From the IMG/VR virus record IMGVR_UViG_3300010885_025649, positions 1 through 64,000 of that record: DNA of 64,000 bases; one strand, 5' to 3'. The first letter of the stretch is position 1; every line of letters starts with the position of its first letter. The notes beneath the pieces were generated by a model that was given only the letters and a program-made list of their open reading frames with translations, did not search any database and was not told the DNA's origin. A program made the translations under genes and the position numbers. Positions 2,581-63,561 of the stretch are shown piece by piece.

Positions 2581-3072
2581 ATGAGTATAGTAACAGACAT
2601 TCAAGCTGACATAACAACTGCCTTGGTTAATCAGGGCAGTTATTTAAACATATATAATAGTTTAGCTTTTGGAGATGTAAATGCCACATTAGCCAACTTA
2701 AGATTAAATCATGCTAGTCAAGTTGCTAATATACTAACAAAGCTAAACAATTACATTACTCAAGCTTATAACACAACACCTGCAGTTATATACACAAATA
2801 CGAGTAGTCAACTCTTAGGTAAATTAGTGCAGGTACATACAGCACAATTAGAATTATACAGATCTCATATCTACAGTACTTTAGTAATTAAACAAGCTCT
2901 GATTAATAGTAGTGGTTATGCCACTGCGGCTAATCCCACAGTAAGTATATTTAATACTACAGAGAAATTAGTACAGACATTAGATATCTGTTTATTAAAC
3001 GTAATAGTATTAGCCTTAAACACTTTATTATTACTAGTACAATACATTAATGATTTTATTCTACTAGGGTAA
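2581..3072 (+). CDS. hypothetical helical protein
   Basis: 163-aa ORF tightly coupled to the upstream gene. Confidence 0.6.
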   Translation: MSIVTDIQADITTALVNQGSYLNIYNSLAFGDVNATLANLRLNHASQVANILTKLNNYITQAYNTTPAVIYTNTSSQLLGKLVQVHTAQLELYRSHIYSTLVIKQALINSSGYATAANPTVSIFNTTEKLVQTLDICLLNVIVLALNTLLLLVQYINDFILLG

Positions 3073-5015: not shown

Positions 5016-6818
5016 ATGGATAAAACAACCAGTAAATTAGTTGATATGCAAAATAGTTTAATCTCTGCCTTAGAGAAGAAAGTTAATAAGGGGCAGAATT
5101 ATAACATATTAGAATTTATTGAGAATGTTTTAGAAACCCCAATAAGTAAACTTTATTTAGCTCAACGAGTAATCTTCAAAGCAGTATACAAATTACCATT
5201 TGATTCTGAAGAAGCCGCTTTAATGCAGCTTTGGGTAAGTAATAATAAAACTAACTGGAAAGAAATATCAGAAGAGCAGAATTGGAAAGTTATAAATATC
5301 CAAGCAGGGATGAGAAGTTCTAAAAGCTGGATGGCTGCGGCCATAGCTTTATATGAGTTCTATAAATGGCATAACATGGATAATCCCAGAGAATTTTATG
5401 GATTACTCCAAGGAGCTATTGTAATAACTTGTTTAGCTACCACAGAAACCCAAGTAAAAGATACTATTTTTGGTAAGATAGTAAGCTTTTATGAAGGGTC
5501 TAGTTATTTTACAAATAATAATGAGATTAGTAAGATTGACACTAGAGTTAGATCTAAGACTAAAGACATGGAGATTATAGCTGCCCCGGCTAACCCTTCA
5601 GCTCTTGTAGGAAAGACTTCTATAGTAGTCGTATTTGATGAAGCTTGTCGTATGCATGAACCTAATGCTTTAGGATCTGTAGAAGCTGTAAGAGCTTTAT
5701 ATACAAGTGTGCAGAAGTCTATTACCAACATATCCCACTTCTCTAAAGTAATCACTGTATCCAGTGCTTGGGAAAAGGGAGACTTTATGGAGTATTTAAT
5801 AGAGAGAGATTGGGAGTATGCCGAGAGAGGATATTTATGCTTCAACTTATCTACATTAGATATAGCTAGTAGTAATGCTAATGTAGCCGCTGAAGTAGCC
5901 ACTCAATTAGAAGTAGAACCTATTGCGGCACTTAGAGATTTCTATAATGTAAGGCCTGAATCTCAATCAGCATTCTTAGATCCTAATGAAGTAAACAAAG
6001 CTTTAATAAGCACACCAATGATATATACAACCCCTAAAGATATTACAGTTAATGAGCATACTTGGGTAGGTGTAGACTATGCTAATATACCTAAATTACA
6101 TTTTAGTGAGATGTCATATATACATGGAGATCCTGGAGTAAGTGGAGATAGTTATGCAATAACTGTAGCTCGACCGGTATATATGGATGGCGTCTATAAA
6201 TGCTTAATAGATTGTGTAATTACTTGGGTACCTACTAAAACTAAAACAGGTGTTAAGAAAGTTAGCTTTGATTCTGTAGAGCAAACTGTTATTGAGTTAT
6301 GTAAGAAACGAAATGTAGGCGCAGTAACTCTTGACCACTTCCAAGGAGAAGGCTTGATACAGAAGCTACAACTCTTAGGTATTAATGCTAGCGAAATGCA
6401 CTTTAATAGAACTCAGCAGACTAATTTATATATGACTTTTAGACAATGGCTAAATGCCGGCCGCATTATATTACCAAAGGATATAGATGTTCCTCCTTAT
6501 AATATCATGGTACAAGAGTTAAAAAGCCTGATGTTAATCGGGGGAACTAAAGTAGATCACCCTAAGACGGGTTCAAAGGATATTGCAGATACTATTGTAG
6601 GGGCATTATCGCACGTAGTAACTCATGAAGCTAATTATCCTAGCGGTGGTACTACTAACAATGGTGCAGTTACTCTTGATAGAAGTATATTTTATACCGG
6701 GGGAATAATCTTAGCTAGAGAAGCGGCTATTCCCGCTAGACAAAACCCATTATTTAATAACAGACGGAGTGCATATGAGTCAGCAAATCTTACCAACTTT
6801 ATGTCCCCTAATAGGTAA
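5016..6818 (+). CDS. terL: terminase large subunit
   Basis: Walker A-like AGMRSSKS, Walker B VVVFDEA, coupling motif ITVSSA, RNase-H-fold nuclease acids IHGDPG..GDSY and KDIAD. Confidence 0.9.
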   Translation: MDKTTSKLVDMQNSLISALEKKVNKGQNYNILEFIENVLETPISKLYLAQRVIFKAVYKLPFDSEEAALMQLWVSNNKTNWKEISEEQNWKVINIQAGMRSSKSWMAAAIALYEFYKWHNMDNPREFYGLLQGAIVITCLATTETQVKDTIFGKIVSFYEGSSYFTNNNEISKIDTRVRSKTKDMEIIAAPANPSALVGKTSIVVVFDEACRMHEPNALGSVEAVRALYTSVQKSITNISHFSKVITVSSAWEKGDFMEYLIERDWEYAERGYLCFNLSTLDIASSNANVAAEVATQLEVEPIAALRDFYNVRPESQSAFLDPNEVNKALISTPMIYTTPKDITVNEHTWVGVDYANIPKLHFSEMSYIHGDPGVSGDSYAITVARPVYMDGVYKCLIDCVITWVPTKTKTGVKKVSFDSVEQTVIELCKKRNVGAVTLDHFQGEGLIQKLQLLGINASEMHFNRTQQTNLYMTFRQWLNAGRIILPKDIDVPPYNIMVQELKSLMLIGGTKVDHPKTGSKDIADTIVGALSHVVTHEANYPSGGTTNNGAVTLDRSIFYTGGIILAREAAIPARQNPLFNNRRSAYESANLTNFMSPNR

Positions 6819-8586: not shown

Positions 8587-9072
8587 ATGGCTATTTCATT
8601 AACAAGTAACGTATACGTTGGTCCATATCCCGAGAGTCCCAATGCATACGGCCGTACATCTGTCCAAGCTTTAGGAGATTTAATTGCTACCAGTGCTACA
8701 ACTGCAATTGCAGCAGTAAATAAAGCAACTACTCTTCAACGTAATGCTGTTACAGTACAACCAGTAACAAACACCTTTGCTATTGATTTTAGTTTGGGTG
8801 ATACTTTTATCCTAAACGTTGGAGCAGCTACTGGAAACATTACAGTTAGTTTTCCTACTAACGTTCCTACAAAAGCTGTTCAATTTAATATCTTATTTGT
8901 TCAGGGTAGTACCGCAAGAACAGTTACCTTTACTGGTGCTTATAAAAACACTCCTACTTTAACTGCTTCTGCTAACGCACAAGACTTTGTTGAAGCAATT
9001 TACTTACCTGCTACTACACTTCCCACAACTACAGCTAAAGTAATCTGTCAGAACACCCTAAACATTGCGTAA
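8587..9072 (+). CDS. small structural/decoration-like protein
   Basis: 161 aa, Ala/Thr-rich, with an 'IDFSLGDTFIL..FNILFVQG..RTVTF' beta-sandwich pattern typical of tail-fibre ends. Confidence 0.55.
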   Translation: MAISLTSNVYVGPYPESPNAYGRTSVQALGDLIATSATTAIAAVNKATTLQRNAVTVQPVTNTFAIDFSLGDTFILNVGAATGNITVSFPTNVPTKAVQFNILFVQGSTARTVTFTGAYKNTPTLTASANAQDFVEAIYLPATTLPTTTAKVICQNTLNIA

Positions 9073-9100
9073 TTCTGATTTTAGTAGTTAGGAGTTTAAT

Positions 9101-9421
9101 ATGGTAGCACCTTTTCAATCCAATATAACTGCTCCTGTAGCAGGTTCTGCTGCGCCCAGTTCAATAGCAACGCCTGTAAAACTAGCAGCTAACTTTACTC
9201 CTGTAAGTACATTAGTAATTACAGCTATTAGACCTACTAGAGTAACTAATACAGGAACAGTTTATATAGGAATTTCTTCAACCAATGACACACAGTTAAT
9301 ACCATTAGCTCCTGGTGCATCTATCACATTAAACTGTGGACCAAAGACATTACTAGATGTCTCCACATTATGGGTAGATGCCACAACTGCTACAGATGGA
9401 GTATGTTGGTTAGGAATCTAG
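9101..9421 (+). CDS. small structural protein
   Basis: 106 aa, AGGAG SD, 'NTGTVYIG..IPLAPGASITL' pattern seen in small phage virion proteins. Confidence 0.55.
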   Translation: MVAPFQSNITAPVAGSAAPSSIATPVKLAANFTPVSTLVITAIRPTRVTNTGTVYIGISSTNDTQLIPLAPGASITLNCGPKTLLDVSTLWVDATTATDGVCWLGI

Positions 9422-9472: not shown

Positions 9473-12400
9473 ATGGCTAGTACAAATGAACAATTAAGAG
9501 CACTAGGAATAACAGGGGAGGTATATAACACCTCCTCTCGTTCTAGTGTTCTTTTTACATCAAGAGGAACTAGCACAAAAGCATTTGATAGGTTACTAAC
9601 TAACGGCAATAAAATAACTAATGTATTACAATACCACATAAATCCTACAGGAGCATTAGGTGGAAAGCTAGTTAATAATGCTACTAATATTTATAGAGCA
9701 AATGATTATAATTCTAGACGCCACCCAGACAGTAGAATTAAACAAGTCCCTAATTATATAGAAGGACCAACTAGAGATAGTTATACTCACATTAAGTTGT
9801 ATGGGGGCACCAAGACTTCCATGTTCAGTACTTCAGGTGCTGGAGGTGGAAATACTCAAGACTTTGGAGAAGAGAGTGAGATAAACCTAAACTATATTTC
9901 TCCTAAGCTAAATAATCTAGAACGGACATTTGTTAAAGATTATTTAAGTGGCAATGCTAAAGATCAGTATCATGATAAAGATATAGCTTTATACTATCAA
10001 GATTATAAAACCCCTGGCATTAGTACAGAAGAAGCTAAGTTAATTAACGCTGCCCAAAAGGGTGACACTATTAATATAGGTAGTGCCACTTTAAGTAGTA
10101 ATAGTATTGTGGGTGCTGCACTAGAAGCTGCTTTAGCTAGGGGTGCACAAGTTAATATTGCTACTACCGTTGATGGAAGTAATACAACAACTACAGCAAG
10201 AACACTAAGTCACTATTCAAACTTAGGTGCAACAGTATTCCCTACTAATGTAGATGGAGTTATACTCCATGCTAACTTCTTAGGAATTAAATATAAGAAT
10301 AAACCTGAAGTAAGTTTAATAACTTCTTTTAGAGCAAGTGCTAAGGCTCAAAGTACTTATGGAGAAACTCAAACTAACCTAGCCATAGAACTCCATGGAG
10401 CAGAAGCTTCCAGTATTAATAAATATATAAATTCTGTATTATTCAAACCAGGAAATGGCCAAGCACCCAGTGCTGTAGGAATTGGTAATAGATTAGCTGA
10501 ACTGGGTAATTCAAATTATCTAAGCGCATTAGTTAATATGAGTGATGCAGTTAATGTTCTTTATACTATCCAAGCAGATATTAGTGGAGATTTATTAACC
10601 AGATATTACAGTGCTAATCAACAAGGATTAACTGGTAGAGCCAGACAGATATATTTAACTCAACCCATCTTTACTGGAGAGCCTGTAGCAGAACAGTTAT
10701 ATTATGTAACTAGAGGAAGTGCTGCTCCTAGTTACGTTAAGGTATTAGATACTATTAGAAGTAGTCCAACTATTTATAATGCTATTAATGGATTTGTGAA
10801 TCAAGCTGTAAGACCTAAAGATGAAACAGCTTTTGGGGCATTTGCTTTTGGCTTCTTAGGGGGACAAGGAGGATTCTTTAAAGGAAATGAGAATCCTATT
10901 CTATCTATATTAGCGGCACCAGCAAGAGGAATAGATAATCTATTCCGGACTCAACGAGCGCCTTTTAATAATGGTGTTTATGGAGCATTAATAGCAGGTA
11001 GCATTGGTTCTATTACTGCAGGAGTTATAGTAAGACAACGCTTTAATAATAATCTAGGATTTATAGCAGGAGCATTAATAGGGGGAAGTATTGGAGCAGC
11101 AATGAACCAAACTCCATCTAATATGTTTAGTACTCCTGGAGTTAAACTAATGGCATTAAACAAAGCTAATAAAGGAGATTTGCAAGATACTAATGCTCCC
11201 GGCCCAGCAGAAAGTCTTATTGGAAATCTATTTAATTCTGTACAATCTGTAGGATTATCCGCATTAATGTATGGAATACAATCTAGAATTGCACCTTTAG
11301 TAATGGATTATATATTCCAAAGCAGTGCTACTACTGCAGCTTTGATGAATAATATTAGTGAAGATCTAAGTAAAATGCCTCCGGGTACTTCTAATGTATC
11401 TAAATTCTTTAGAAGTATTGGAGTCTTTGGTGCTAAAAGTGTTGGACTTGTTAATACTATTGGTAACTTAAATAGTATTCGTAGAGGAATTGCTATTGGT
11501 AACTTAGGATTATATGGATCCTTTGCTAGAGATCTCTTTGGATTAGATATGTTAGTCCAATTAAATAGACCTATAGGTAATGCTACAGGAAATTATACTC
11601 ATGGAGTTGAAGTCTATCATAAAATAGGAGCTGAAAATCCTGGTGTTCTTATTAGACCAGGAGATGATTTTAGAGGTAAGTTAGATCCTATTTTAGATAA
11701 AGGTTATAATATCCAACTAAGTACAGTTTCAAGAGATCCTGAAATCTTACGTCAATATGGTAGAGGAATATTCCGGGAATCCAGTTCATCGGGGTTATTG
11801 GGAAGAGTTAATAAGAAAGTTATAGCAGAGGCGTTAAATACTATTCTAGACTTAAACTCCAGAATACATTTAAAAGATGGAACCTTTGGATTAGCACATA
11901 CTACTTATGGTAGAGCATTTGGTACAGTAGACCAAGAGTTAACCGGAGACTTAAATACACGATTAAATACTGATATTGAAAGCTTTATTAAAACACATCA
12001 TCCAACTGCTACCGTATTAGAAATAGCGGAAATAAAACGCAGGATAATATTTGGTAACGAAGTAGAGATAAATGGAAATAAAGTACGAGCACCAACTTAT
12101 CAATACCTTACTGAGGCTGGTATAGATAATATAGATAGATTGTTTGGATATTACAGACAAGGAATGAATATCTTAGGAGCTATTTATGTTAACCCCATGA
12201 TATTTGCTCTCGGGAACAAACCAAAAGATACTTCATTAACCATTAAGGATTTACTAGCTGCTATTCAAGAAGGAACCTCTAATGTATTTGGATTACCTTT
12301 AAACTTATTTGATAATGATGATAAGTTAAAAGCACTATTTAAAAGTAATAATGATGAGGGGCCTCTTAAATACTTTAGTAGTAAAGGCAAAGCCATTACT

Positions 12401-15400
12401 CAATTGTTTCTACAAGATGCTAGTAACAAAAGTATATCTGCAGACTTATCAACAAACTTAAATACTAATGATAGAGAGGTAAGATCACTAAGGGGATTCT
12501 TTGGTAAAGAATCTAGTGCGCTTGGAGAAAAGATAGCTTTATTAGGAGCTGAAAATAAATTAGCTCTTAGAGGATTAGCTGGATTAAAGTTATTAGGAAT
12601 GACACTACCACTTACTTTAGTAGGATTAGCTTTAGGAGATCAACCAGGAAACTCTTTAACTACAGCTACTACAATGTTATTTGATCAACTACAAAACGGA
12701 CCATCTCTATATGGATCTAAGCTATTAGGAGGTCTAGCAAAAGTAGGTGGAATTAATCAAGACTATTTTACTGGAGGTGTTAAACCCGCATTAGGGTTTA
12801 GTTTAAATCCATTTTATTTAAAGAGAGCAGGCATCGCCACAAATCCTAATGGAACTCCTTTAATGTATTCCGATGGTACCTATCAGTATGTAGATAAAGG
12901 AAGAGACTGGAAAGAAGATCTGCAATTAACTGGGCAATTATCTTTAGAAATTGGTGGAGGTCTTTTAGCTTATAATGCTATTAAACATGGAGTAGGATTA
13001 GCTACTGATTTAGCAGATTTAAAAGCAGGAGGTACTCGCAGCTTAGAAAGAATTATTGGGAGTAGATTAAATAGATTAGCTGGAGAAACTGTATTACCCG
13101 CATTAGCCTTACTTACCTTTGGAGCCGTAGATACGGCTGTGGATAGTCTAGTACAAAAGGTAAGTCCTTATGGAGTTAACTATGGCATGTCCTTTATGTT
13201 ACTTAGTGGTGTTGCTGGAGCAGGTATAGGAGCCGTATTTAATAAAGATTCAGGGCGTATTAAAGCAGGTGCTAAAGGGGCAGTTGGTGGATTATTACTG
13301 GGTGCGGTAGCAACCATGATTGCAGAGTTTGCTACTACATTAGGTGTAGATGCAATTAGAGGTGCCGCTGGATTAATCTCTGGAAGACCTATAGATGATG
13401 CAGTAATGAATAATACTGTAGAAGGTTCTCTAAGAAATACTTATAGATATGCTTTAAGTATTGGAGATATGGCAGGAGCTATTAGAGCTAGAGCAGAAAT
13501 GCAAAGTATGGGATTCTATATAGATAATTCTAATAGTAGATTAAGTCATTCTATAGCTACACAGTTAGGAACAACTCCGGTAGCACAAAATGCTATCTCT
13601 TTAAATATAGATAATAGTGGAGCAGTCATACCTACTCTTAGTTTCCAATTACCTTTATTAGGCTTTGGAGTTAATTTAGAATCACCTGTAAAGTTTGCCT
13701 TTAGATCTAACCAACAATTATTATTAGCTAGGGATCCAGATCAGAATTATAGTAAGGTATATGAAGGTGGTTTAGTATTACCACAACAATTAGGAATGCC
13801 TAATATGTTAGGTATGGGATTAGGAGCCATTGCTGGTATAGCAGCTAAAGGAGCCTTTACTAGATTCGGATTACCAGCAATAGTTCCAATGGCTCTTGGA
13901 GGACTTATTGGAGGATTTGGATTTAATGCTTATAACAGCCTTACTAATAAAGATAAACCAAAACAAGGAAGTCTAAGTATTGAATACAATTCTGGTAATG
14001 ATTTAGAGAAGTTAATGTTAGGTTATACAGCAATAGCTCCTATATTAGTAAGCAGTCAATTAATCAGTGGTGCTTTTATCAACACGGGTATTGGATTAGC
14101 TAATAGTTCCACAAATGAACTAGTACAAAAAGCTGGAGGTACTCTAATAGGTTTAGGATATAAAATAAGTACTAATCCTATAGTTAGCGCTGCTCGAATG
14201 ATGGGAGGGCACGCTAATAATTTAGTAGGTGGACAATGGGGATTATTTAATAATACTTATGGATTAATTAATAGAGACCGAGGAATTCCAGTTATCCCAT
14301 TAAATGATAAATTACCCGGGGGTAAAATTCCAGAAAGGTCCGTAACACATTTACCAGCATTCTTAGTAAAAGGTATAGGTAAAACAGTTAAGTATGCAGC
14401 AGCTTATATGTTATTATCTAACATGTTTGATTTAAATAAGACTATACCTTTAGGAAATGGTAATACAATACCCACATTATTTAGTCCTACAGCAGCCTTA
14501 ATTACAGGAACTTATGCTAGCTTAAAATACGGTCCTAGATTATTACCAGAAGGTAGTATAAAAGAGTTTGCTAATATTATTGGTGGAAGTAGAAGTAGAG
14601 CATTAACCTCTATGTTCGCTGTTATAGGGGCAACAGCATTATATACTTTAAGTGCACAAACCACAAATGGAATTCCAACACCAAGAAAGTCTGTAGCAGC
14701 ATTAAATAACATTGCAAGTATTCCTTTTATAGGAAACCCTCTAGCTAAGATAACTGACTTCTTCTATGGAGTTAGTAGAAATGCATCTATACAAGATAGA
14801 TACACAGTTATCCCTACAGTATTTGGAGGAATTCGTACAGGAACAAATACCAATTCATTACTTACCGGAGATTTTGGAAGTCCTATTGTAAGAAAGCGTG
14901 GTGGTGCTGGTCTTATTACTTCTGATATAACCACAGCATTAAGTTCAGGATCTTTTAGTGGATTATTATATTTAGGTGCTGCCCAGAACACTACATTAAC
15001 TATTACAGGTAATCAAGGATCTAGTTTTACTAAAATGGGCAATTACACATTACCCAGAAATAGCTATGTGCAGATGATTTTCCAAGGAGCAGATTTATCT
15101 TATGCCTATAACTTATTACCCAGCGGAGATAAAGCACAAAAACAAAGAGCATTAGCTAGATTTAATGTAATCAAAAATGCTGGCCCTAATCCTAAGAACA
15201 TATTAAAGGCATTAAATACGCAACGCCCCGGATTCAGTCAGCAAGATTATAGAACTAGTTCCCCATTATTTAGTTCAGCTACTTTAAAAGCAGTTCATTC
15301 TGAGTTAATATTAGCTGCATTAAAACAGCGGCAATTTGTCACTGAATATATCTTAAAGAATCCTTCTGAGGATATCACAAGTTATTTAGATAGTTTAGGT

Positions 15401-18400
15401 GTAGATAAAATGCTTAATGGGATAGGTGCTTTAAGTAAGCAAGTCATCCTACCTGTGCGCGGTAACTTCTACTGGAACAGAACTGCTGTAGGAGGCCCTG
15501 TAGGAGCCGGCCCAACAGGACATCCCTATTTTATTGGTGGTGGGGAAGTAGATACCAGTGCTCAATTAACCTTACAGAACTTTAATTATAATAGTTTACA
15601 AACTGTACAAAATGCCGCGGCTAATGATAAAGCATTAACTATATTTAATCTTGGATTAATAAGTCTTAGTGGATTAATATTAGCAGGACCTTTACTGGGT
15701 AATCTATTTACTAATGCCTCTAGAAGAACAAATATTGATAGATACGTGGCTGAAGGTGGTGGTCAGCGTTCTATGATTAACATAGGAGCTTATAATACAG
15801 AGCGGGGAGGCAACCAATTATTAGCAAAAGTAGCCTTATCTGGTGCTGGGGATAGTAATCTGGGTACTTTAGCTTATCTTGGGGGCTTACCTATTTATCA
15901 TACTGATGTTATACCAGGTAGTTATAAAACCGCATATGACAACGTTTCAAAGAATATATCAGAATTATATGTGGGAGACGCGCAACGAAAGCTTAATACT
16001 ATAGACAGAAATAACATCGCTTCAGTTAAAGAGTTTGCTGAATTAATCCATGGAAAGCTAACAGACTTACGTAACTCAATGTTCACAGGCTCTGAGAATA
16101 TTACGAATGAATTAAACGCACGGCCGGATATTGTAGCTAAATTTGATCCACATAGAGATAGAAATAGATTAGCTAAAATATCTGAATTAGATAAAGTATT
16201 AGCCGGATTACGAGCTGATATAGATTCCGCAGTAGATCCGCATAGATTATTAGAAAAGACTCTAAGCCGTAGAGAGCCATTTAGAGATGTAAGTGCTGCG
16301 GGGGTATTTAAACTGATGGGCTTTGAAGTAGACCCGGGTGGTAATACTTTAGCCAGAATGGCTACATGGTTTGGAGAACGAATTCCAGGAGCTAAAAGTA
16401 TATATGATTTTATCCGCCCTAATAAATTAACCAAGGCAGCTAGAGCAGAAGATCCTCTAAGACTACACACTATGAGTAGTGCAGAATCTGATCGGATATT
16501 AAACGGTTTAGGTGTTAAAGAAAGCGAGCGGATTAAAGCTAGTATCTTTACAGATGTGGAAAATCAAGTAGCCGGGAAAACCGCATTAAGGATTATGGGA
16601 AGTACTGGTGCAGGTGTTATTGGAACCTTACAGAACTTAGCTATTACAAGTATGTTCTTAGATGTTGGGGATAGTAGGCGCAGTATGGTTTATAGAGAAA
16701 ACCAAGCAACAACAGCGCTTGAAACCACTTCTTTATTCTTAGGTACTCATATGGCTACTCAAGTATTAACTACTGGAGGAAAAGCCGCATATGAATTAGC
16801 TACTACTGGAACAATGAATAGAGTAGGATTAGTCGCTATGTTTGCCAACCCTGAAGTAAGTTGGCTCCCCGGCCTTTTTATAGCCGGTGCCACCATGTTT
16901 GGTCCAACAGTATTAGACTGGATGGATCATATGGGTGTACCCGGGATTAAAGGCTTCAAACAAGGTGTAGGAAGTAATCTAGAACGTGCTGCTAATTGGG
17001 CAGATAAAGGATTAAATACTAACCAAAGTGTAGGGAGTACTTCTTTAGGATTCGCGGCATTAACAGCCTTAACTATCTTTACTGCAGGTGGAGGTTTCAT
17101 TGCTGCGGGAGTGGCCGGAGGTGTAGTTGCAGCCGCTAACTCTTTAGCTAATAAAGGTACTAAGGCTACCCCTGCCCAACAATTAGCTAATACTCTTCAA
17201 GCAATACAGAATATTCCTGGAATTGGTCCTAATGTTATAAGACCTATATGGGAAAAAGCTAATGACTTATTTGAGAGTACTTATCAAACTTTAGCAAATC
17301 AAATTAGAGGAGGCTTACAAGCAGATCCTAAGAGTTTCTGGTGGGGTGTTGCTGAAGGAATAGTAGAAGGTTCTTCTGGAAGAAATCTATTTGAGGATAG
17401 AACTAAAATAAACAGTGCTCAGAGTATGTTCTTAAGTGGTTATTATAGAGGTTCTCCACTATTCAGTGTTAATAATAGAGACTATAAAGCTTTAGGATAT
17501 GACGCTAACTACCAGAAGTTCCTAGCAGATACACATGAGCAGGAACAAAGTAGATTAAACACAGACACATTAATTAGCACAAGAATATTACACAAGACTG
17601 TATTAAACGGTATAGCATATTCTGGAGATTATCAAGATGAAGTCTTTGCTAATAGATTAATGGGAGGAAGTCAAGGAAGAATCTTTACTAAAGGTAGTAG
17701 AGCTATAGATAATCTATTAATGCTTTCTATTACTAGTAGAGCAGAAGATACTCAATGGGTATTTGGATCTGTATATAACCGAGCTGTAGAAAGAGAAACT
17801 ATTAAGAATAGTGGTGTAGCTATAGGAGCTATGCTACTACCTACATTAGGTGCTATGGCTACGCTAGGTGGTGCTGGCTATATAGCCAGCAGAGCAGCTA
17901 AGCGAGGTCGTCCACCAAGTTCAGGAGGTCTTACTGAACCTGAGGCACCAAAACCTAATCTACCTGATCCACCTAATCAAGGAGTTCTATTAGAAGAGAG
18001 GCCTGCATCACAAAGAAGAGTATTAACTCAAGCGGAGCAAACTCATGACTTCTTAATATGGCGTAATGAAACTGCTGAAGGTAAAATTGCATATAAGAAT
18101 CATGGCGTACATGCTAGGGGTATATATAATAAATTATATGGAGTTACGGGGCATCAATCTAGTGAGGCTTATGTAAAACCTTTAATGGGTAATGAGGCCC
18201 AGCATGATTATAGGCTATGGTTACAAACTGCTGAAGGTAAAGCCGCCACTATAGAAGGCAAAGGTAGTTTTGATGATTACTTTGACTTGTTTGGATTTAA
18301 AGGTCATCAACCTAAACCTAGTCCACAACCAGTAATACAAAATAAGTTAAATCCAGAGCAGTACTTAGAGTCAGCAAAGCTTGCAGCTACTCGCCCCTCA

Positions 18401-21400
18401 GTTCAAGGTCCTGCAAAGAATCCTACAACTAGTCCATTAAGCACTCCTACTGCTCCATTAGCAGCGCCTATTAGTACTCCTGTAGCACCAGTAGTTAATC
18501 AATTACAGCCGCCAAGTGATGTCACAACAACTCCTTTAACACTAGAAACAACTCCACATACACCAATCACTAATAGAAGATCATACACTTTGGGAGAGCA
18601 TACACAAGGATTAGGAGGTTTAGTACTCGGGGTAGGTTTAGTTGCTACTGCTTGGTCTTTTAGAGAAGCTCAAATGACTAACTTTAAAGACACAGATGCT
18701 GATACAAATCTCTTTATTAGTTCAGCAGGAGTAGCAACACAACTTCTGGGAGGTAAAGCAGGAGTAATTGGTAATACCATTTTAGGTATAGGTATGATTG
18801 GACTACAAGCTAAAGTTGCTGCAGAGAACCAATGGAAGAATCAAGAAGCTAATGCAAATGTAGTAGGAATTGGAAGTAATATATTAGGTAACTTAGCTGG
18901 ATTTACTGCTTTAAGTGCAGTGGCAGAAGGTTTAGGAGGAGTAGCTGGTATAGCTGCAGGAGTGGGAGCAACAACAGGATTAGCAGCAGCAGCCGTCCCA
19001 ATAGCAATTGGTGCAGCAATATTAGGCGGCGCCGCACTTATAGGGGCAACAGCAGAGTGGATTGGAAAAGGAATATATAATAATGTAACCAAACCACAGC
19101 CCGTATCACAGGTCTCAAAACCAGTTACAGTTAGTAATAAATATGTTAATGTGGCCCCTGTATATAAAAATCCAGTTAGTAATAATATACAAGTAGATAA
19201 AACCAATACTGATTATATTAGTGTATATCATTCTAATAGAAGCCCAGTAAGTACAAGAGTGCATTTAGCTAATACTGGTAGTCCACCTATTAGTGATTAT
19301 GTTGGTATGTATCATTCTAATAGAAGTCCTATAAGTAGTAAATTAAGTCTACCTAAACCTGTTCCACATATAGCAGAGTATGTAAGTAAGTACTCGTCTA
19401 GTAGAAGTCCTATTAGTAGTAAACTGCCTTTAACTAAAGTTACTAGTTCACCAATTATCAAATATCAATCTACTAGAAACCCAACCAGTACTAGAATAAA
19501 TCTATCAAATCCTATTAGCAGTTTTATTGATAGACCAGCTCACTTTAATAATCTTAATCCCGCTGAATATGTAAGTAAATATGTATCAAATAGAAGTCCT
19601 ATTAGTACTAAAATTAATCAACACAAAACTAATACTTTAGGTTCAGTTAGTAATACAAAACATATTAATACCAATCCATATTATGCAGTGATTGCTCATG
19701 TAGATGATGATAGAATAAATAGTAATCTTATAGATACAAGACAACTAACATCTTTAAACCAACTTAAGGAAACTTTAGTTAGTATCAAACATAAAGCTAA
19801 TGGACAACATGTAATATTAGATTTAGATACTCATGGTATAGAAGGAAGAGGCTTCGCATTTACAAAAACTGCGCATGGTAAGACTACAGTTAGCGCAATG
19901 TCTGCTAAATATCTTAATAGACAATTGTATGAAGCTGGGTTTAAGAAAGATGACATCACAGTTATTTTAGAAACTTGTAATGCTTATTTCTCTTATAATA
20001 GTTCAAAGAGTGGATTCAAAGCTACTTCAAAAAGTGATATTGAAAAAGCAGAATCTAGAATAAATTCTAGTAAAGCTACAGCTACCTTATTAGACACTAA
20101 TAAAGAAACACCCATAGAGTATAAAATGTATGGGCGCCGGTCAGGTAATTACGAATACTTAGCATTAGCACAATATGTAGGAAATGTAGAATTACAGGGT
20201 CCAGCTAATAGAACAGAGATTGTTGAAGTGCATGGAAATTATAAAGGCTCTGTAGATACCAACTATCCACTGACGTTCCTAAATATACACGATCAAATAA
20301 TCGCAAGTATAAATTCAAACTATATTGAACAATATCCTTCTGGCAGAAGCCCTGTAAGCACAAAGCACAGTAAAAATATATTCCAAAATATCTTTGAGTT
20401 CTTCTTCGGTAAGCCTGTTGCAGCAGATACTTTAAAGGATCCAAGTAATTGGTTAACTAATAGTCAATACACAGCATTAACCAAAACTGCAGGCGCTAGT
20501 AAATTAGAGCAGAGAGTTAATAAGAGTCTACCTGCATTAAATACTAAAGGAACGCCTCTACAAAGTATTCAGAAGAAACCTAATACATTAGACTATATAC
20601 AATCCGCTACTATGAACTTCTTTGATCAGATAAAAGAAGACTTTAATTATATTCTAAATAGAGTTGGTAGTGGTTTAAATAAAATAGGTAATGGAATTGG
20701 CCATGCTATTTCTAATTCAGTAGATGGTATTGGAAAACTATTCGGCAAAAGCTCACAAACCTTTGACCAACAATCCCCAACGTTAATGGCAAATCTTATG
20801 AGAGATTTCAGTCTCACAAAGGAACAAGCCGCGGGAATAGTAGGTAACTTAGGTCATGAGTCTGCGGGGTTACAAGCAGGTATACATCACATTGGATCTA
20901 CAAGCAGTAATGCGGGTATAGGTTGGGCACAATGGGTTGGACCCAGACGTAAAGCCTTTGAGCAATACTTAACTATGACCAATCAAAAGGCTACTGATGC
21001 AAATGCCAATTACGGCTTCTTAAAGCAGGAATTAATGGGGCAATACAGAAGTGCCATTAAAGAAGTCAGAAAGCAATCTACCGTACACAACTCCATGGTT
21101 GTATTCGAGAAGATTTACGAAGGGGCTGGTATAAAGAATTATGCTAGCAGAGAAAGATATGCTAACCGCGCTTTAGCTACATTGGGTAGTATATCTACCA
21201 CAGCAACAGTTAGTAATAATTCAGAAGCACTATTCCCTATAGTTGGGTACAGCTCTTTAACAGCTCCTGTAAGAGGTCAATTTGGTACCCAGAGGCCCGG
21301 GCATGTACACCAAGGTACTGATTATGGTATCCCAGTAGGAACAGGCCTTGTAGCCCCATTAAACGCCACTGTAAGTGAAGCCGGAAGTAATTCCAGTATG

Positions 21401-22201
21401 GGTACTTACATTAGATTAAAAGCATTAGATAATTCCGGTAGAGCTATTAAATATACCTTTATGCACTTATCTCAACTAGATGTACATAAGGGTGAACAAG
21501 TAGTAGCAGGACAGGAAATAGGTAAAAGTGGTAACTCCGGACATAGTACAGGAGCACACGTCCATATAGAAGTACAGCAAGGTAACTTGAATATAGATCC
21601 GGCAGCATATTTTGGTAAGCGCGCTGGAGTAAGTAAAGTAGCACAAGTTGTGCCTAAAGGGGAAACAAAGACTAGTAATAGTAACCAAACCCAAAGTGCT
21701 ATTGATCCTTATACCGGACAGTATAGAGGAGAAGTATATGATGGAAATACTTTAAACAGTATTAAAAGATATGTACCAACCGGTAGAGGCTATAAGTTAG
21801 ATATCCTTAATGGTTCTGAAGTAGTAGTTATAACAGATGCTAATAATAATACACAGCATCAGCATATTAATTTAGATATGAAACCTAAAGTTAATATGAG
21901 TGTAATGTCACCCACTATAGTAAGTCCAGTTAAAGCTACTCCTATAACCCCTACTAAGAAGAATAAAGTAAAGACTACTATTAAAGTAGTAGTTACACCA
22001 ACTTGTTATAAGGAGGAGATGATTAGTAGAGGGCAGATACAATTAGATACAGCTAAATCTCCTACTCCAATAAGTCATAGTGCTAAGGCTGTCATAGTAG
22101 TAAATAAAGATGGAAAGGCCAATCAAGTTATGCATGAAGAAAGAGCCACTGAATTAACAATGGCTCAATGCGGGATCCCCAATTTTCAATACAGAGCTTA
22201 A
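9473..22201 (+). CDS. giant (4242 aa) tape-measure/ejection-type virion protein with PLD-like, multi-TM, putative clan-CD protease, phage lysozyme-2 and M23 peptidase domains
   Basis: HIK at 9788 and LHAN at 10268 in a PLD-fold context. Many Gly/Ala hydrophobic helices. VILDLDTHG...VILETCN. QAAGIVGNLGHES...GWAQW (lysozyme-2 family). HQGTDYG...FMHL...STGAHVH (M23). Confidence 0.8.
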   Translation: MASTNEQLRALGITGEVYNTSSRSSVLFTSRGTSTKAFDRLLTNGNKITNVLQYHINPTGALGGKLVNNATNIYRANDYNSRRHPDSRIKQVPNYIEGPTRDSYTHIKLYGGTKTSMFSTSGAGGGNTQDFGEESEINLNYISPKLNNLERTFVKDYLSGNAKDQYHDKDIALYYQDYKTPGISTEEAKLINAAQKGDTINIGSATLSSNSIVGAALEAALARGAQVNIATTVDGSNTTTTARTLSHYSNLGATVFPTNVDGVILHANFLGIKYKNKPEVSLITSFRASAKAQSTYGETQTNLAIELHGAEASSINKYINSVLFKPGNGQAPSAVGIGNRLAELGNSNYLSALVNMSDAVNVLYTIQADISGDLLTRYYSANQQGLTGRARQIYLTQPIFTGEPVAEQLYYVTRGSAAPSYVKVLDTIRSSPTIYNAINGFVNQAVRPKDETAFGAFAFGFLGGQGGFFKGNENPILSILAAPARGIDNLFRTQRAPFNNGVYGALIAGSIGSITAGVIVRQRFNNNLGFIAGALIGGSIGAAMNQTPSNMFSTPGVKLMALNKANKGDLQDTNAPGPAESLIGNLFNSVQSVGLSALMYGIQSRIAPLVMDYIFQSSATTAALMNNISEDLSKMPPGTSNVSKFFRSIGVFGAKSVGLVNTIGNLNSIRRGIAIGNLGLYGSFARDLFGLDMLVQLNRPIGNATGNYTHGVEVYHKIGAENPGVLIRPGDDFRGKLDPILDKGYNIQLSTVSRDPEILRQYGRGIFRESSSSGLLGRVNKKVIAEALNTILDLNSRIHLKDGTFGLAHTTYGRAFGTVDQELTGDLNTRLNTDIESFIKTHHPTATVLEIAEIKRRIIFGNEVEINGNKVRAPTYQYLTEAGIDNIDRLFGYYRQGMNILGAIYVNPMIFALGNKPKDTSLTIKDLLAAIQEGTSNVFGLPLNLFDNDDKLKALFKSNNDEGPLKYFSSKGKAITQLFLQDASNKSISADLSTNLNTNDREVRSLRGFFGKESSALGEKIALLGAENKLALRGLAGLKLLGMTLPLTLVGLALGDQPGNSLTTATTMLFDQLQNGPSLYGSKLLGGLAKVGGINQDYFTGGVKPALGFSLNPFYLKRAGIATNPNGTPLMYSDGTYQYVDKGRDWKEDLQLTGQLSLEIGGGLLAYNAIKHGVGLATDLADLKAGGTRSLERIIGSRLNRLAGETVLPALALLTFGAVDTAVDSLVQKVSPYGVNYGMSFMLLSGVAGAGIGAVFNKDSGRIKAGAKGAVGGLLLGAVATMIAEFATTLGVDAIRGAAGLISGRPIDDAVMNNTVEGSLRNTYRYALSIGDMAGAIRARAEMQSMGFYIDNSNSRLSHSIATQLGTTPVAQNAISLNIDNSGAVIPTLSFQLPLLGFGVNLESPVKFAFRSNQQLLLARDPDQNYSKVYEGGLVLPQQLGMPNMLGMGLGAIAGIAAKGAFTRFGLPAIVPMALGGLIGGFGFNAYNSLTNKDKPKQGSLSIEYNSGNDLEKLMLGYTAIAPILVSSQLISGAFINTGIGLANSSTNELVQKAGGTLIGLGYKISTNPIVSAARMMGGHANNLVGGQWGLFNNTYGLINRDRGIPVIPLNDKLPGGKIPERSVTHLPAFLVKGIGKTVKYAAAYMLLSNMFDLNKTIPLGNGNTIPTLFSPTAALITGTYASLKYGPRLLPEGSIKEFANIIGGSRSRALTSMFAVIGATALYTLSAQTTNGIPTPRKSVAALNNIASIPFIGNPLAKITDFFYGVSRNASIQDRYTVIPTVFGGIRTGTNTNSLLTGDFGSPIVRKRGGAGLITSDITTALSSGSFSGLLYLGAAQNTTLTITGNQGSSFTKMGNYTLPRNSYVQMIFQGADLSYAYNLLPSGDKAQKQRALARFNVIKNAGPNPKNILKALNTQRPGFSQQDYRTSSPLFSSATLKAVHSELILAALKQRQFVTEYILKNPSEDITSYLDSLGVDKMLNGIGALSKQVILPVRGNFYWNRTAVGGPVGAGPTGHPYFIGGGEVDTSAQLTLQNFNYNSLQTVQNAAANDKALTIFNLGLISLSGLILAGPLLGNLFTNASRRTNIDRYVAEGGGQRSMINIGAYNTERGGNQLLAKVALSGAGDSNLGTLAYLGGLPIYHTDVIPGSYKTAYDNVSKNISELYVGDAQRKLNTIDRNNIASVKEFAELIHGKLTDLRNSMFTGSENITNELNARPDIVAKFDPHRDRNRLAKISELDKVLAGLRADIDSAVDPHRLLEKTLSRREPFRDVSAAGVFKLMGFEVDPGGNTLARMATWFGERIPGAKSIYDFIRPNKLTKAARAEDPLRLHTMSSAESDRILNGLGVKESERIKASIFTDVENQVAGKTALRIMGSTGAGVIGTLQNLAITSMFLDVGDSRRSMVYRENQATTALETTSLFLGTHMATQVLTTGGKAAYELATTGTMNRVGLVAMFANPEVSWLPGLFIAGATMFGPTVLDWMDHMGVPGIKGFKQGVGSNLERAANWADKGLNTNQSVGSTSLGFAALTALTIFTAGGGFIAAGVAGGVVAAANSLANKGTKATPAQQLANTLQAIQNIPGIGPNVIRPIWEKANDLFESTYQTLANQIRGGLQADPKSFWWGVAEGIVEGSSGRNLFEDRTKINSAQSMFLSGYYRGSPLFSVNNRDYKALGYDANYQKFLADTHEQEQSRLNTDTLISTRILHKTVLNGIAYSGDYQDEVFANRLMGGSQGRIFTKGSRAIDNLLMLSITSRAEDTQWVFGSVYNRAVERETIKNSGVAIGAMLLPTLGAMATLGGAGYIASRAAKRGRPPSSGGLTEPEAPKPNLPDPPNQGVLLEERPASQRRVLTQAEQTHDFLIWRNETAEGKIAYKNHGVHARGIYNKLYGVTGHQSSEAYVKPLMGNEAQHDYRLWLQTAEGKAATIEGKGSFDDYFDLFGFKGHQPKPSPQPVIQNKLNPEQYLESAKLAATRPSVQGPAKNPTTSPLSTPTAPLAAPISTPVAPVVNQLQPPSDVTTTPLTLETTPHTPITNRRSYTLGEHTQGLGGLVLGVGLVATAWSFREAQMTNFKDTDADTNLFISSAGVATQLLGGKAGVIGNTILGIGMIGLQAKVAAENQWKNQEANANVVGIGSNILGNLAGFTALSAVAEGLGGVAGIAAGVGATTGLAAAAVPIAIGAAILGGAALIGATAEWIGKGIYNNVTKPQPVSQVSKPVTVSNKYVNVAPVYKNPVSNNIQVDKTNTDYISVYHSNRSPVSTRVHLANTGSPPISDYVGMYHSNRSPISSKLSLPKPVPHIAEYVSKYSSSRSPISSKLPLTKVTSSPIIKYQSTRNPTSTRINLSNPISSFIDRPAHFNNLNPAEYVSKYVSNRSPISTKINQHKTNTLGSVSNTKHINTNPYYAVIAHVDDDRINSNLIDTRQLTSLNQLKETLVSIKHKANGQHVILDLDTHGIEGRGFAFTKTAHGKTTVSAMSAKYLNRQLYEAGFKKDDITVILETCNAYFSYNSSKSGFKATSKSDIEKAESRINSSKATATLLDTNKETPIEYKMYGRRSGNYEYLALAQYVGNVELQGPANRTEIVEVHGNYKGSVDTNYPLTFLNIHDQIIASINSNYIEQYPSGRSPVSTKHSKNIFQNIFEFFFGKPVAADTLKDPSNWLTNSQYTALTKTAGASKLEQRVNKSLPALNTKGTPLQSIQKKPNTLDYIQSATMNFFDQIKEDFNYILNRVGSGLNKIGNGIGHAISNSVDGIGKLFGKSSQTFDQQSPTLMANLMRDFSLTKEQAAGIVGNLGHESAGLQAGIHHIGSTSSNAGIGWAQWVGPRRKAFEQYLTMTNQKATDANANYGFLKQELMGQYRSAIKEVRKQSTVHNSMVVFEKIYEGAGIKNYASRERYANRALATLGSISTTATVSNNSEALFPIVGYSSLTAPVRGQFGTQRPGHVHQGTDYGIPVGTGLVAPLNATVSEAGSNSSMGTYIRLKALDNSGRAIKYTFMHLSQLDVHKGEQVVAGQEIGKSGNSGHSTGAHVHIEVQQGNLNIDPAAYFGKRAGVSKVAQVVPKGETKTSNSNQTQSAIDPYTGQYRGEVYDGNTLNSIKRYVPTGRGYKLDILNGSEVVVITDANNNTQHQHINLDMKPKVNMSVMSPTIVSPVKATPITPTKKNKVKTTIKVVVTPTCYKEEMISRGQIQLDTAKSPTPISHSAKAVIVVNKDGKANQVMHEERATELTMAQCGIPNFQYRA
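19226..20365 (+). repeat. six copies of an 11-aa repeat Y-x-S-x-R-[SN]-P-[IVT]-S-[ST]-[KR] inside the giant protein
   Basis: In-frame copies start at 19226, 19310, 19391, 19463, 19580 and 20333. Confidence 0.9.
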
Positions 22202-59848: not shown

Positions 59849-59865
59849 TATAAAAGGATAAGACG

Positions 59866-61296: not shown

Positions 61297-61309
61297 GGAG
61301 TATTAATAT

Positions 61310-61843: not shown

Positions 61844-61852
61844 GGTAAAATC

Positions 61853-62440: not shown

Positions 62441-62449
62441 GAGGTATTC

Positions 62450-63559: not shown

Positions 63560-63561
63560 TA

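What the first reader, a model, noticed from the sequence alone, without database searches (positions are those of the whole stretch)
9473..22201. 4242-aa multi-enzyme virion protein that could attack each envelope layer
Seen, in order: PLD-like N-terminus; about 2800 aa with many Gly/Ala-rich hydrophobic helices; a Pro-rich linker (~17900-18570); further hydrophobic helices (~18600-19070); repeats plus putative protease; lysozyme-2; M23; a basic tail. Known: tape-measure proteins often carry peptidoglycan hydrolases and TM helices. Inference: this length and domain set suggest a tape-measure/ejection protein that forms a trans-envelope DNA channel through a thick (cyanobacterial-type) wall.
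Basis: partly seen in the sequence, partly recalled or inferred. Interest (0 to 1): 0.7.

Follow-up and report, generated by a model that had tools for sequence, protein, structure and literature searches.

The report
Giant wall-cutting phage entry protein
A freshwater jumbo phage with a contractile tail encodes a real 4242-residue protein that ends in two cell-wall-cutting enzymes and carries about ten membrane-like segments, so it is probably carried in the virus particle to breach the host envelope, but it has not been shown to be the tail's tape measure.

Summary
The ORF is real: window 9473-22201 (+), 4242 aa. It recurs at 99.95% nucleotide identity in a second assembly, and it has one collinear relative (6670 aa) among about 15 billion proteins.

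Confirmed:
- C-terminal Phage_lysozyme2 and Peptidase_M23, with intact HxxxD/HxH motifs
- about 10-12 Gly/Ala-rich hydrophobic segments, conserved in position in the relative
- a Pro-rich linker
- five or six copies of a ~27-aa peptide repeat.

Not confirmed:
- The "PLD" call is sub-threshold and lacks the K and D of the HKD motif.
- The "protease" has no HMM, PDB or fold support. It has only a clan-CD-like His3454-Gly...Cys3502 dyad. This Cys is the only one in the first 4177 residues.

Context: a ~216-kb myophage distantly related to Microcystis phage Ma-LMM01. The gene lies at the end of the late/structural strand, after the large terminase, not between tube and hub. No tape-measure profile matches outside the M23 domain, and no chaperone-like genes lie upstream.

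The lysozyme+M23 pair is the module found in tape-measure proteins, phi29-type gp13 and podophage ejection proteins. Ma-LMM01 carries a comparable glycosidase+M23 pair as a small baseplate-module gene. The protein is extremely poor in cysteine.

Best reading: a virion-borne, ejected envelope-breaching protein. Whether it rides in the tail lumen or the capsid is open. It is a new variant of a known kind.

The parts
9473..22201 (+). Intact 4242-aa ORF (P0001), stop codon included
   Evidence: same gene in a second contig
9473..10510 (+). Variable N-terminal module, aa 1-346. It is not shared with the 6670-aa relative. It contains a sub-threshold PLDc_2 match (aa 189-293, nt 10037-10351) without the HKD Lys and Asp.
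10511..18022 (+). Conserved core, aa ~347-2850. It is collinear with relative P0004 at 22-31% identity and nearly equal spacing. It has no known domain and no internal duplication.
10976..11116 (+). Hydrophobic glycine-zipper-like pair, aa 502-548. The 'IAGxxIGGxxGA' pattern is conserved in P0004.
13184..13348 (+). Hydrophobic Gly/Ala-rich segments, aa 1238-1292
13790..13921 (+). Hydrophobic Gly-rich segments, aa 1440-1483
15641..15706 (+). Hydrophobic segment, aa 2057-2078. P0004 has a counterpart at about aa 2096.
17051..17149 (+). Hydrophobic Gly/Ala segments, aa 2527-2559. P0004 has a counterpart at about aa 2508.
17813..17869 (+). Hydrophobic segment, aa 2781-2799. P0004 has a counterpart at about aa 2815.
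17900..18571 (+). Pro-rich linker, aa ~2810-3033, with a two-copy 'HD[FY]xxWxxTAEGK' repeat
18605..19063 (+). Second hydrophobic Gly/Ala-rich region, aa 3045-3197
19199..19672 (+). Five or six ~27-aa peptide repeats, [DE]Y[IV]xxYxSxRSP[IV]S[ST][KR], aa 3243-3400. One more copy lies at aa 3625-3640.
19745..20272 (+). Candidate clan-CD-like cysteine peptidase region, aa ~3425-3600. His3454 in 'VILDLDTHG' is at nt 19832-19834. Cys3502 in 'VILETC' is at nt 19976-19978. Not confirmed by any profile or fold.
20789..21178 (+). Phage_lysozyme2 (PF18013) domain, aa 3773-3902
   Evidence: E 4.8e-22
21305..21601 (+). Peptidase_M23 domain, aa 3945-4043. HxxxD is at aa 3946 and HxH at aa 4029.
21602..22198 (+). 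C-terminal ~200 aa of unknown fold, mildly basic, holding 2 of the protein's 3 Cys
8587..9421 (+). Two small upstream ORFs (161 aa and 106 aa). They are beta-rich, do not overlap, and do not look like tail-assembly chaperones.
5016..6818 (+). Large terminase subunit, on the same strand upstream

Best explanation
P0001 is a late-expressed, virion-borne protein of a ~216-kb freshwater myophage. It is expelled through the tail at infection and breaches the host envelope.

Proposed mechanism:
1. Its C-terminal two-enzyme module cuts peptidoglycan. The lysozyme-type glycosidase cuts glycan strands and the M23 endopeptidase cuts peptide links.
2. Its position-conserved Gly/Ala-rich hydrophobic segments insert into membrane and help make or line the DNA path.
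3. I think a tail-associated position is somewhat more likely than a capsid-internal one, with the C-terminus at the baseplate end, as in a tape measure.
4. A possible internal Cys-peptidase, with flanking repeats, could release the lysin module.

Shown: the ORF, the two hydrolase domains with intact motifs, the hydrophobic segments, the conserved core, the cysteine depletion and the gene context. Inferred: virion presence, ejection, membrane insertion, location in the particle and self-cleavage.
For: - The lysozyme2+M23 tandem is confirmed. Across phage records it aligns to tape-measure proteins, tail lysins and phi29-type gp13.
- The cyanopodophage A4 ejection protein gp28 carries a transglycosylase plus M23 (PMC12002296).
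- The gene is co-oriented with, and closes, the structural/late gene block: portal, capsid, sheath, tube, hub, baseplate, fibres, terminase, then P0001. The block was closed across the contig break.
- M23 occurs only once in the genome. The relative Ma-LMM01 instead has a 397-aa protein in its baseplate module with an M23 domain (34% identity to P0001's) and an N-terminal 'AAGRYQ' motif I read as glycosidase-like. This suggests the same tail-tip job has been moved onto P0001.
- A separate candidate endolysin exists: a GH19-like 213-aa ORF.
- Cysteine is extremely depleted: 3 in 4242 aa against 1.29% in the rest of the proteome (P about 3e-20). The proven virion tape measure P23-45 gp96 has 0 in 5002 aa, and P0004 has 0 in 6670 aa.
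- The hydrophobic segments keep their positions in P0004 despite only 22-31% identity.
- P0004 also ends in peptidoglycan hydrolases of different families, SLT and glucosaminidase. The architecture is conserved, not the particular enzymes.
Against: - There is no direct evidence of virion presence.
- No tape-measure or ejection-protein profile matches outside the M23 domain.
- The core is an orphan: no neighbours in the Atlas and nothing in the PDB.
- The gene is about 15 kb from the tube/hub genes, and no chaperone-like genes lie upstream.
- The G/N/S/T-rich composition is unlike a helical ruler.
- Hydrophobic Gly/Ala segments scored by Kyte-Doolittle are not proof of transmembrane helices.
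- P0004's hit to a tape-measure PHROG rests on a promiscuous profile that rings in 13 of 14 control genomes.
Confidence: 0.6

Rival explanations
1. It is the true tape measure. A trimer or hexamer fills the tail-tube lumen, sets tail length, and leaves first on contraction. This is a sub-case of the best explanation.
For: - No other tape-measure candidate was recognised in the genome.
- The slot after the tube holds two tube paralogues, a transposase and a hub-like protein.
- TM segments plus a metallopeptidase are typical of tape-measure proteins, and a 5002-aa multi-enzyme tape measure exists in P23-45 (PMC10770324).
- Core length is conserved between P0001 and P0004: offsets stay within about 100 aa over 2500 aa.
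- Having the hydrolases at the C-terminus fits tape-measure polarity (T5 Pb2, PMC5380687).
Against: - At 1.5 A per residue, 4242 aa gives about 640 nm and 6670 aa about 1000 nm. That is implausible for a contractile tail if the chain is fully extended (own arithmetic).
- The composition is not helix-rich.
- There are no chaperone genes or frameshift upstream.
- No tape-measure profile matches.
- Ma-LMM01 likewise has no tape measure after its tube, so an empty slot is a trait of the lineage and not evidence for P0001.
- The second giant Cys-free protein, P0003, is an equally open candidate.
Confidence: 0.3
2. It is a capsid-packaged ejection or 'polyvalent' protein. It would be stored in the head like T7 gp16, A4 gp28, P1 DarB or the N4 virion RNA polymerase, and would follow or precede the DNA through the tail.
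For: - The gene sits next to the terminase, not the tail genes.
- A4 gp28 shows that a transglycosylase+M23 pair can be capsid-internal.
- A MuF-like minor head protein gene lies beside the portal gene.
- The modular variable ends resemble polyvalent-protein logic: N-terminal PLD-like against SNase-like, and a kinase in P0004.
- The genome also encodes a 3188-aa putative RNA polymerase that would have to be delivered in the same way.
Against: - P0001 has no MuF domain or other head-targeting domain.
- Capsid-internal ejectosomes are known mainly from podophages. A myophage tail tip needs its lysin at the baseplate, which is where Ma-LMM01 encodes it.
Confidence: 0.25
3. It is not a virion protein. 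It would be a membrane-anchored giant lysis, envelope-remodelling or superinfection-exclusion protein made inside the infected cell.
For: - Apart from a sub-threshold GH19 hit, it holds the only recognisable peptidoglycan hydrolases in the genome.
- PHROG hits to its M23 domain include families annotated as endolysins, one with a 2898-position profile.
- It has many hydrophobic segments.
Against: - A 213-aa GH19-like ORF in a small minus-strand island is a more ordinary endolysin candidate.
- The lysozyme2+M23 pair aligns mostly to virion proteins.
- Extreme cysteine avoidance and the late-operon position fit a structural or ejected protein.
- A 470-kDa lysis protein would be unprecedented (own knowledge).
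Confidence: 0.1
4. It is an artefact: a chimeric assembly, or several genes fused by error.
For: It comes from a metagenome, and the family has only two members.
Against: - Two assemblies agree, with 7 substitutions in 12.7 kb and no indels.
- A public freshwater run holds 98% of the sampled words from 6 kb of the gene.
- P0004 is collinear over about 2500 aa.
- Cysteine avoidance is uniform along the whole ORF.
Confidence: 0.02

Closest known systems
Thermus phage P23-45 gp96, a 5002-aa tape-measure protein with a fused virion RNA polymerase (PMC10770324)
   Same: - A giant single polypeptide, free or nearly free of cysteine.
- Hydrophobic membrane segments plus an M23-type metallopeptidase (33% identity over 105 aa).
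- A multi-enzyme protein delivered by the virion.
   Different: - gp96 lies in the canonical tail slot of a siphovirus with an 800-nm tail. It is A/L/E-rich and carries a DFDGD RNA polymerase.
- P0001 is in a myovirus, away from the tube/hub genes, and is G/N/S/T-rich. It has no DxDGD motif and adds a lysozyme domain.
- There is no similarity outside the M23 domain.
- In this genome the DxDGD motif sits in a separate 3188-aa protein.
phi29-family gp13 and staphylococcal/SPbeta-like tape-measure lysin modules (lysozyme + M23)
   Same: The same two-domain order. The domains align together: Bacillus phage GA1 gene 13 at 25.6% identity over both domains, and Mammaliicoccus/Staphylococcus tape-measure proteins at 26-28%.
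   Different: Those proteins are about 365 aa (own recollection for gp13) to about 2000 aa and come from phages of Gram-positive hosts. Here the module is the last ~500 aa of a 4242-aa protein.
Phage T5 Pb2 (tape measure with fusogenic and muralytic activities) and phiKZ gp181 (246-kDa virion peptidoglycan hydrolase) (PMC5380687)
   Same: Large tail-associated proteins that combine a long body, membrane-active parts and a C-terminal muralytic domain.
   Different: No sequence similarity was detected. A tblastn search of aa 1-3000 against 50,697 phage records found nothing. P0001 is two to three times larger.
Anabaena podophage A4 gp28 ejection protein (PMC12002296)
   Same: Helical body plus lytic transglycosylase plus M23. 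It is proposed to degrade peptidoglycan and to build a trans-envelope ejectosome.
   Different: gp28 is 1058 aa, is stored inside the capsid of a short-tailed phage, and has no series of hydrophobic segments reported there.
Microcystis phage Ma-LMM01 gp095 (397-aa 'metallo-endopeptidase' in the baseplate module)
   Same: It comes from the nearest cultured lineage. Its M23 domain is 34% identical to P0001's, and it is preceded by an 'AAGRYQ' motif I read as glycosidase-like.
   Different: It is a small stand-alone baseplate-module gene. Ma-LMM01 has no detectable counterpart of the 2850-aa core.

Membership tests
Tail tape measure protein | Gene lies between the tail tube / assembly chaperones and the baseplate hub | tested here: not met
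   Sheath, tube, two tube paralogues, a transposase and a hub-like protein lie at G000 187848-198441. P0001 lies about 15 kb further on, after the fibres and the terminase. T4 shows this rule is not absolute (own knowledge).
Tail tape measure protein | Upstream chaperone pair with a programmed frameshift | tested here: not met
   The upstream ORFs (161 aa and 106 aa) are beta-rich, are separated by 28 nt, and have no family hit.
Tail tape measure protein | Match to tape-measure sequence profiles outside any lysin domain | tested here: not met
   Pfam and PHROG hits cover only aa 3771-4176. phrog_1272 finds nothing in the genome.
Tail tape measure protein | Long helix-rich body | tested here: inconclusive
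   Composition is G 10%, N 7%, S 8%, T 7.5%, E 3.5%, against A 13%, L 13%, E 10% in P23-45 gp96. Chou-Fasman averaging was uninformative. No reliable secondary-structure prediction was available.
Tail tape measure protein | Hydrophobic membrane segments and a peptidoglycan hydrolase domain (frequent, not universal) | tested here: met
   PMC10770324
Tail tape measure protein | Protein length proportional to tail length; present in the tail lumen | not testable with these tools
   No isolate, EM image or proteome exists.
Peptidase M23 (lysostaphin/LytM type) | Profile match over the cut-off and the Zn-ligand motifs HxxxD and HxH | tested here: met
   68 bits against a cut-off of 28.7. H3946xxxD and H4029xH are present. 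PDB M23 chains match down to E 2e-12.
Phage_lysozyme2 (PF18013) | Profile match over the cut-off | tested here: met
   79 bits against a cut-off of 28.2, covering profile positions 7-138 of 140. A Glu is present in 'GHES'. Its catalytic role is inferred.
Phospholipase D / Nuc (HKD) superfamily | HxKxxxxD catalytic motif and a profile match over the cut-off | tested here: not met
   19.5 bits against a cut-off of 27. His266 sits in 'LHANFLGIK', and there is no HxK...D anywhere in the protein. The AF2 model has pLDDT 37.
Clan CD cysteine peptidases (caspase / C80 CPD-like) | His-Gly and Cys, each after a hydrophobic strand, in the order His then Cys, about 40-50 aa apart | tested here: inconclusive
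   The motif is present: 'VILDLDTH3454G' then 48 aa then 'VILETC3502'. This Cys is the only one in the first 4177 residues. The language-model search lists Peptidase_C80 and DUF4347 clusters at scores of 0.89-0.91. There is no Pfam, PDB or homologue hit, and the fold model is unusable.
Polyvalent (MuF-linked, head-packaged) proteins | MuF or another head-targeting domain fused to effector domains | tested here: not met
   P0001 has no such domain. A separate MuF-like minor head protein lies at G000 178830-180272.

The most novel reading that the evidence does not exclude
This myophage lineage has no conventional tape measure. Instead it loads two giant cysteine-free polypeptides for delivery through the contractile tail. 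One is P0001, a 4242-aa envelope-spanning conduit protein that cuts peptidoglycan, inserts its glycine-zipper segments into the membranes, and frees its lysin module with a built-in clan-CD autoprotease acting at the flanking RSP[IV]S repeats. The other is a 3188-aa single-chain two-barrel RNA polymerase (P0003). Together they would split between two proteins what Thermus phage P23-45 does with one fused tape measure-polymerase.
Probability: 0.15. Interest if true: 0.8.

Novelty: new variant of a known kind. Interest (0 to 1): 0.55.

Why it matters
Giant multi-enzyme virion proteins are emerging as the way large phages carry their first-contact machinery into the cell. P23-45 gp96 and the crAss-like virion RNA polymerases are examples.

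P0001 defines a very rare family: two members among about 15 billion proteins. The family has a ~2850-aa orphan core of conserved length and exchangeable enzymatic ends. It occurs in a freshwater myophage lineage related to bloom-controlling Microcystis phages, in which no tape measure has been identified.

If the protein proves to be virion-borne, it would show how a contractile-tailed phage gets DNA across a thick wall. It would also supply a new two-enzyme lysin module, and possibly the first self-processing clan-CD peptidase in a phage entry protein.

Tried and rejected
- **Sequence searches.** A tblastn search of aa 1-3000 against 50,697 GenBank phages found nothing. Word-indexed searches of 5.8 billion protein clusters, using the whole length and aa 1200-2900, found only the protein itself. 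A search with aa 3425-3640 alone found nothing.
- **Scans of contig collections.** IMG/VR and JGI-metagenome scans used patterns from aa 1-1200 alone and from two P0001/P0004 alignments. They returned only the same phage. P0004's 25.7-kb contig could not be fetched because the protein is too long for the look-up and the contig is absent from the scanned set.
- **Distant relatives.** Relatives found through the large terminase (23-33% identity) have no giant ORF nearby.
- **Structure prediction.** Single-sequence AF2 of aa 3400-3760 and of aa 1-346 gave pLDDT 36-37. I therefore ran no fold search, since one would be meaningless.
- **Protein Atlas.** The core (aa 340-2380) found no meaningful neighbour.
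- **PDB.** Only M23 chains matched.
- **Internal structure.** Self-BLAST found no internal duplication in the core. Chou-Fasman averaging did not discriminate.
- **Rejected: the 1176-aa ORF (P0002) after the tube is the tape measure.** It is S/T/N-rich, it is collinear with Ma-LMM01 gp093, and its Atlas neighbours are GpP/Gp44 hub families.
- **Rejected: P0004's tape-measure PHROG hit as evidence.** That profile rings in 13 of 14 control genomes.
- **Rejected: homology between P0001 and P0003 or Ma-LMM01 gp080.** No significant match was found.
Full report
**1. The observation**

Window 9473-22201 (+) is a single open frame of 4242 codons. At about 35% GC, roughly 7% of random codons are stops, so chance is excluded (own arithmetic).

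The window is the first 64 kb of a 212,497-bp IMG/VR virus record. A second, independently assembled contig of 155,514 bp from a freshwater metagenome carries the same gene. It shows 12 substitutions over 22,226 nt. Seven lie in the gene, changing four residues, and there are no indels. A public freshwater run holds 98% of the sampled words from 6 kb of the gene. The gene is real and correctly assembled.

**2. Domain calls**

- *Hydrolases.* Pfam finds Phage_lysozyme2 at aa 3773-3902 (E 5e-22) and Peptidase_M23 at aa 3945-4043 (E 8e-19), and nothing else over threshold. The M23 Zn motifs HxxxD (aa 3946) and HxH (aa 4029) are intact. The PDB search returns only M23 chains.
- *PLD.* The PLDc_2 match scores 19.5 bits against a cut-off of 27. 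The aligned His sits in 'LHANF', without the Lys and Asp of the HKD motif. An active PLD is therefore not supported.
- *Protease.* The region at aa ~3425-3640 has no Pfam, PDB or homologue hit. It does contain 'VILDLDTH3454G' followed 48 residues later by 'VILETC3502'. That is the His-Gly...Cys arrangement after hydrophobic strands typical of clan CD peptidases (own knowledge). A language-model search lists Peptidase_C80 and DUF4347 clusters among its neighbours. Cys3502 is one of only three Cys in the protein and the only one before residue 4178. This remains a lead, not a finding.
- *Structure.* Both AF2 single-sequence models were unusable (pLDDT 36-37).
- *Other features.* Kyte-Doolittle analysis finds 12 uncharged Gly/Ala-rich hydrophobic segments. 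The Pro-rich linker and the ~27-aa repeats 'YxSxRSP[IV]S[ST][KR]' are there as described. The C-terminal tail is only mildly basic.

**3. A two-member family**

An exhaustive HMMER search of aa 1-1200 against 1.84 billion representative proteins found one relative. This is P0004, 6670 aa, from a 25.7-kb JGI metagenome contig.

The two proteins are collinear over aa ~350-2850, with almost unchanged spacing:

| P0001 | P0004 | Note |
|---|---|---|
| 347-1121 | 252-1075 | |
| 1264-1403 | 1260-1406 | |
| 1696-2048 | 1724-2087 | 31% identity |
| 2577-2847 | 2606-2894 | |

The hydrophobic segments sit at matching positions, and one glycine-zipper-like pattern is conserved.

Outside the core the two differ. 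P0004 has a weak SNase-like N-terminus, an ABC1/kinase-like domain, an SLT-like stretch and a glucosaminidase at the C-terminus. The family plan is therefore a variable N-terminal module, a ~2500-aa orphan core of conserved length, then variable cargo that ends in peptidoglycan hydrolases.

The core has no internal duplication. It has no neighbours in the Atlas. It finds nothing in GenBank phages, IMG/VR or the JGI contigs.

**4. Genome context**

PHROG scans identify a myovirus:

| Gene | G000 coordinates |
|---|---|
| Portal | 175914-177416 |
| Major capsid | 182517-183674 |
| Sheath | 187848-191420 |
| Tube | 191431-192102 |
| Baseplate wedge | 206054-207121 |

The second contig closes the circle. 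A 3607-bp gap between the record's end and window position 1 holds most of a 1765-aa fibre-like ORF. One co-oriented late block therefore runs portal, capsid, sheath, tube, hub, baseplate, fibres, large terminase (window 5016-6818), two small beta-rich ORFs, then P0001. The replication genes follow on the other strand.

The capsid protein's only matches in GenBank phages are freshwater cyanophages of the Ma-LMM01 group, at about 26% identity. The portal, sheath and tube proteins also match Ma-LMM01's and lie in the same order.

**5. Is it the tape measure?**

Against:
- It is not in the canonical slot.
- The upstream ORFs do not look like chaperones.
- No tape-measure profile matches outside the M23 domain.
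- Its composition is unlike the A/L/E-rich P23-45 gp96.
- A fully extended 4242-aa (or 6670-aa) ruler would give a 640-nm (or 1000-nm) contractile tail (own arithmetic).

For:
- No other tape measure was recognised.
- The slot after the tube holds two tube paralogues, a transposase and P0002. P0002 is a weak collinear homologue of Ma-LMM01 gp093, and its Atlas neighbours are hub families. The whole lineage therefore lacks a tape measure in that place.
- TM segments plus a metallopeptidase are typical of tape-measure proteins, and a 5002-aa multi-enzyme tape measure is known (PMC10770324).

I leave this question open, at about 0.3.

**6. Why a virion-borne entry protein is the best reading**

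- The lysozyme+M23 tandem aligns as a unit to tape-measure proteins, tail lysins and phi29-type gp13. A transglycosylase+M23 pair also occurs in the capsid-stored ejection protein of cyanopodophage A4.
- M23 occurs only once in this genome. Ma-LMM01 encodes a comparable pair as a 397-aa baseplate-module gene. Its M23 domain is 34% identical to P0001's, and I read its N-terminal 'AAGRYQ' motif as glycosidase-like. This suggests functional displacement onto P0001.
- A GH19-like 213-aa ORF is an ordinary endolysin candidate, so P0001 is not needed for lysis. Eight other hydrolase families were searched and are absent elsewhere in the genome.
- P0001 has 0.07% Cys, against 1.29% in the rest of the proteome (P about 3e-20). 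P0004 (0 of 6670), the proven virion protein gp96 (0 of 5002) and this phage's second giant protein (0 of 3188) share the trait. That fits proteins threaded through a narrow channel into an oxidising compartment (inference).

**7. Mechanism (inferred)**

1. On sheath contraction the protein leaves the particle.
2. The C-terminal glycosidase and M23 endopeptidase open the peptidoglycan.
3. The Gly/Ala-rich segments insert into membrane and help form the DNA path.
4. The candidate Cys-peptidase, flanked by repeats on both sides, may release the lysin module.

None of these steps was tested.

**8. Verdict**

This is a new variant of a known kind: giant virion-associated lysin or tape-measure-like proteins. 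It stands out for its size, its rarity and its orphan core of conserved length.

Noticed in passing
G000:C1:165329-174895 (-) = L002:1329-10895 (outside the window): A second giant ORF (P0003, 3188 aa, no Cys) lies antisense just upstream of the portal gene. It carries 'GDYDGD' at aa 2135, which resembles the Mg-binding DxDGD motif of two-barrel RNA polymerases. It ends in three Gly/Ala-rich hydrophobic segments and an acidic tail. It has no Pfam or PDB hit. It is a possible virion RNA polymerase.
   Followed up: partly
L011:2700-13388 (-) = Microcystis phage Ma-LMM01 gp080 (NC_008562.1 57700-68388): The syntenic 3562-aa hypothetical protein of Ma-LMM01 carries 'GDFDGD' at aa 2537, has no Cys, and has a similar hydrophobic-plus-acidic C-terminus. 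No paper in the searched library links Ma-LMM01 to a two-barrel RNA polymerase.
   Followed up: partly
G000:C1:193580-194806 (+) = L003:9580-10806: A transposase gene (phrog_506, E 1e-107) sits inside the tail module between the tube paralogues and the hub-like gene. This is exactly where a tape-measure gene would be expected.
   Followed up: no
window 28571-31372 (-) and 31387-34215 (-); G000:C1:69061-70989 (-): The large and small ribonucleotide reductase subunits are each about 930-940 aa and have extra internal hits (terminase, endonuclease, PhoH-like). The thymidylate synthase ORF carries an HNH endonuclease insert. These are probably inteins or homing elements.
   Followed up: no
G000:C1:202661-204992 (-): A four-ORF minus-strand island lies inside the plus-strand tail module. 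Its 213-aa ORF has a sub-threshold GH19 match (E 3.6e-5, 20.3 bits). This is a candidate lysis cassette.
   Followed up: partly
L008:1726-7023 (+) (G001:C1:127726-133023), bridging the G000 end and window position 1: The 3607-bp gap of the record is closed by the second contig, giving a circular map of about 216.1 kb. The gap lies inside a 1765-aa fibre-like ORF (phrog_877, E 3e-71) with a Ser/Thr-rich repeat tail that ends in a Gly run.
   Followed up: yes
G000:C1:192194-193480 (+): The two ORFs after the tail tube gene (130 aa and 290 aa) are paralogues of the tube protein (E 7e-8 and 2e-6 against Ma-LMM01 gp092).
   Followed up: partly
P0004 (6670 aa, JGI metagenome protein), aa ~4000-4280: The only relative of P0001 carries an ABC1/protein-kinase-like domain (E 4e-13) between the conserved core and its peptidoglycan hydrolases.
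   Followed up: no
window 58574-64000 (+), continuing to G000 66249: A plus-strand gene block with locally raised GC (0.44 at 60-62 kb, against about 0.33 elsewhere). The ORFs are mostly unknown, and one has an LtfC-like beta-sandwich. This may be a second fibre or host-range cluster.
   Followed up: no
G000:C1:100933-103002 (-): An rIIA-like gene (phrog_612, E 4e-64) is present in this Ma-LMM01-related freshwater phage.
   Followed up: no
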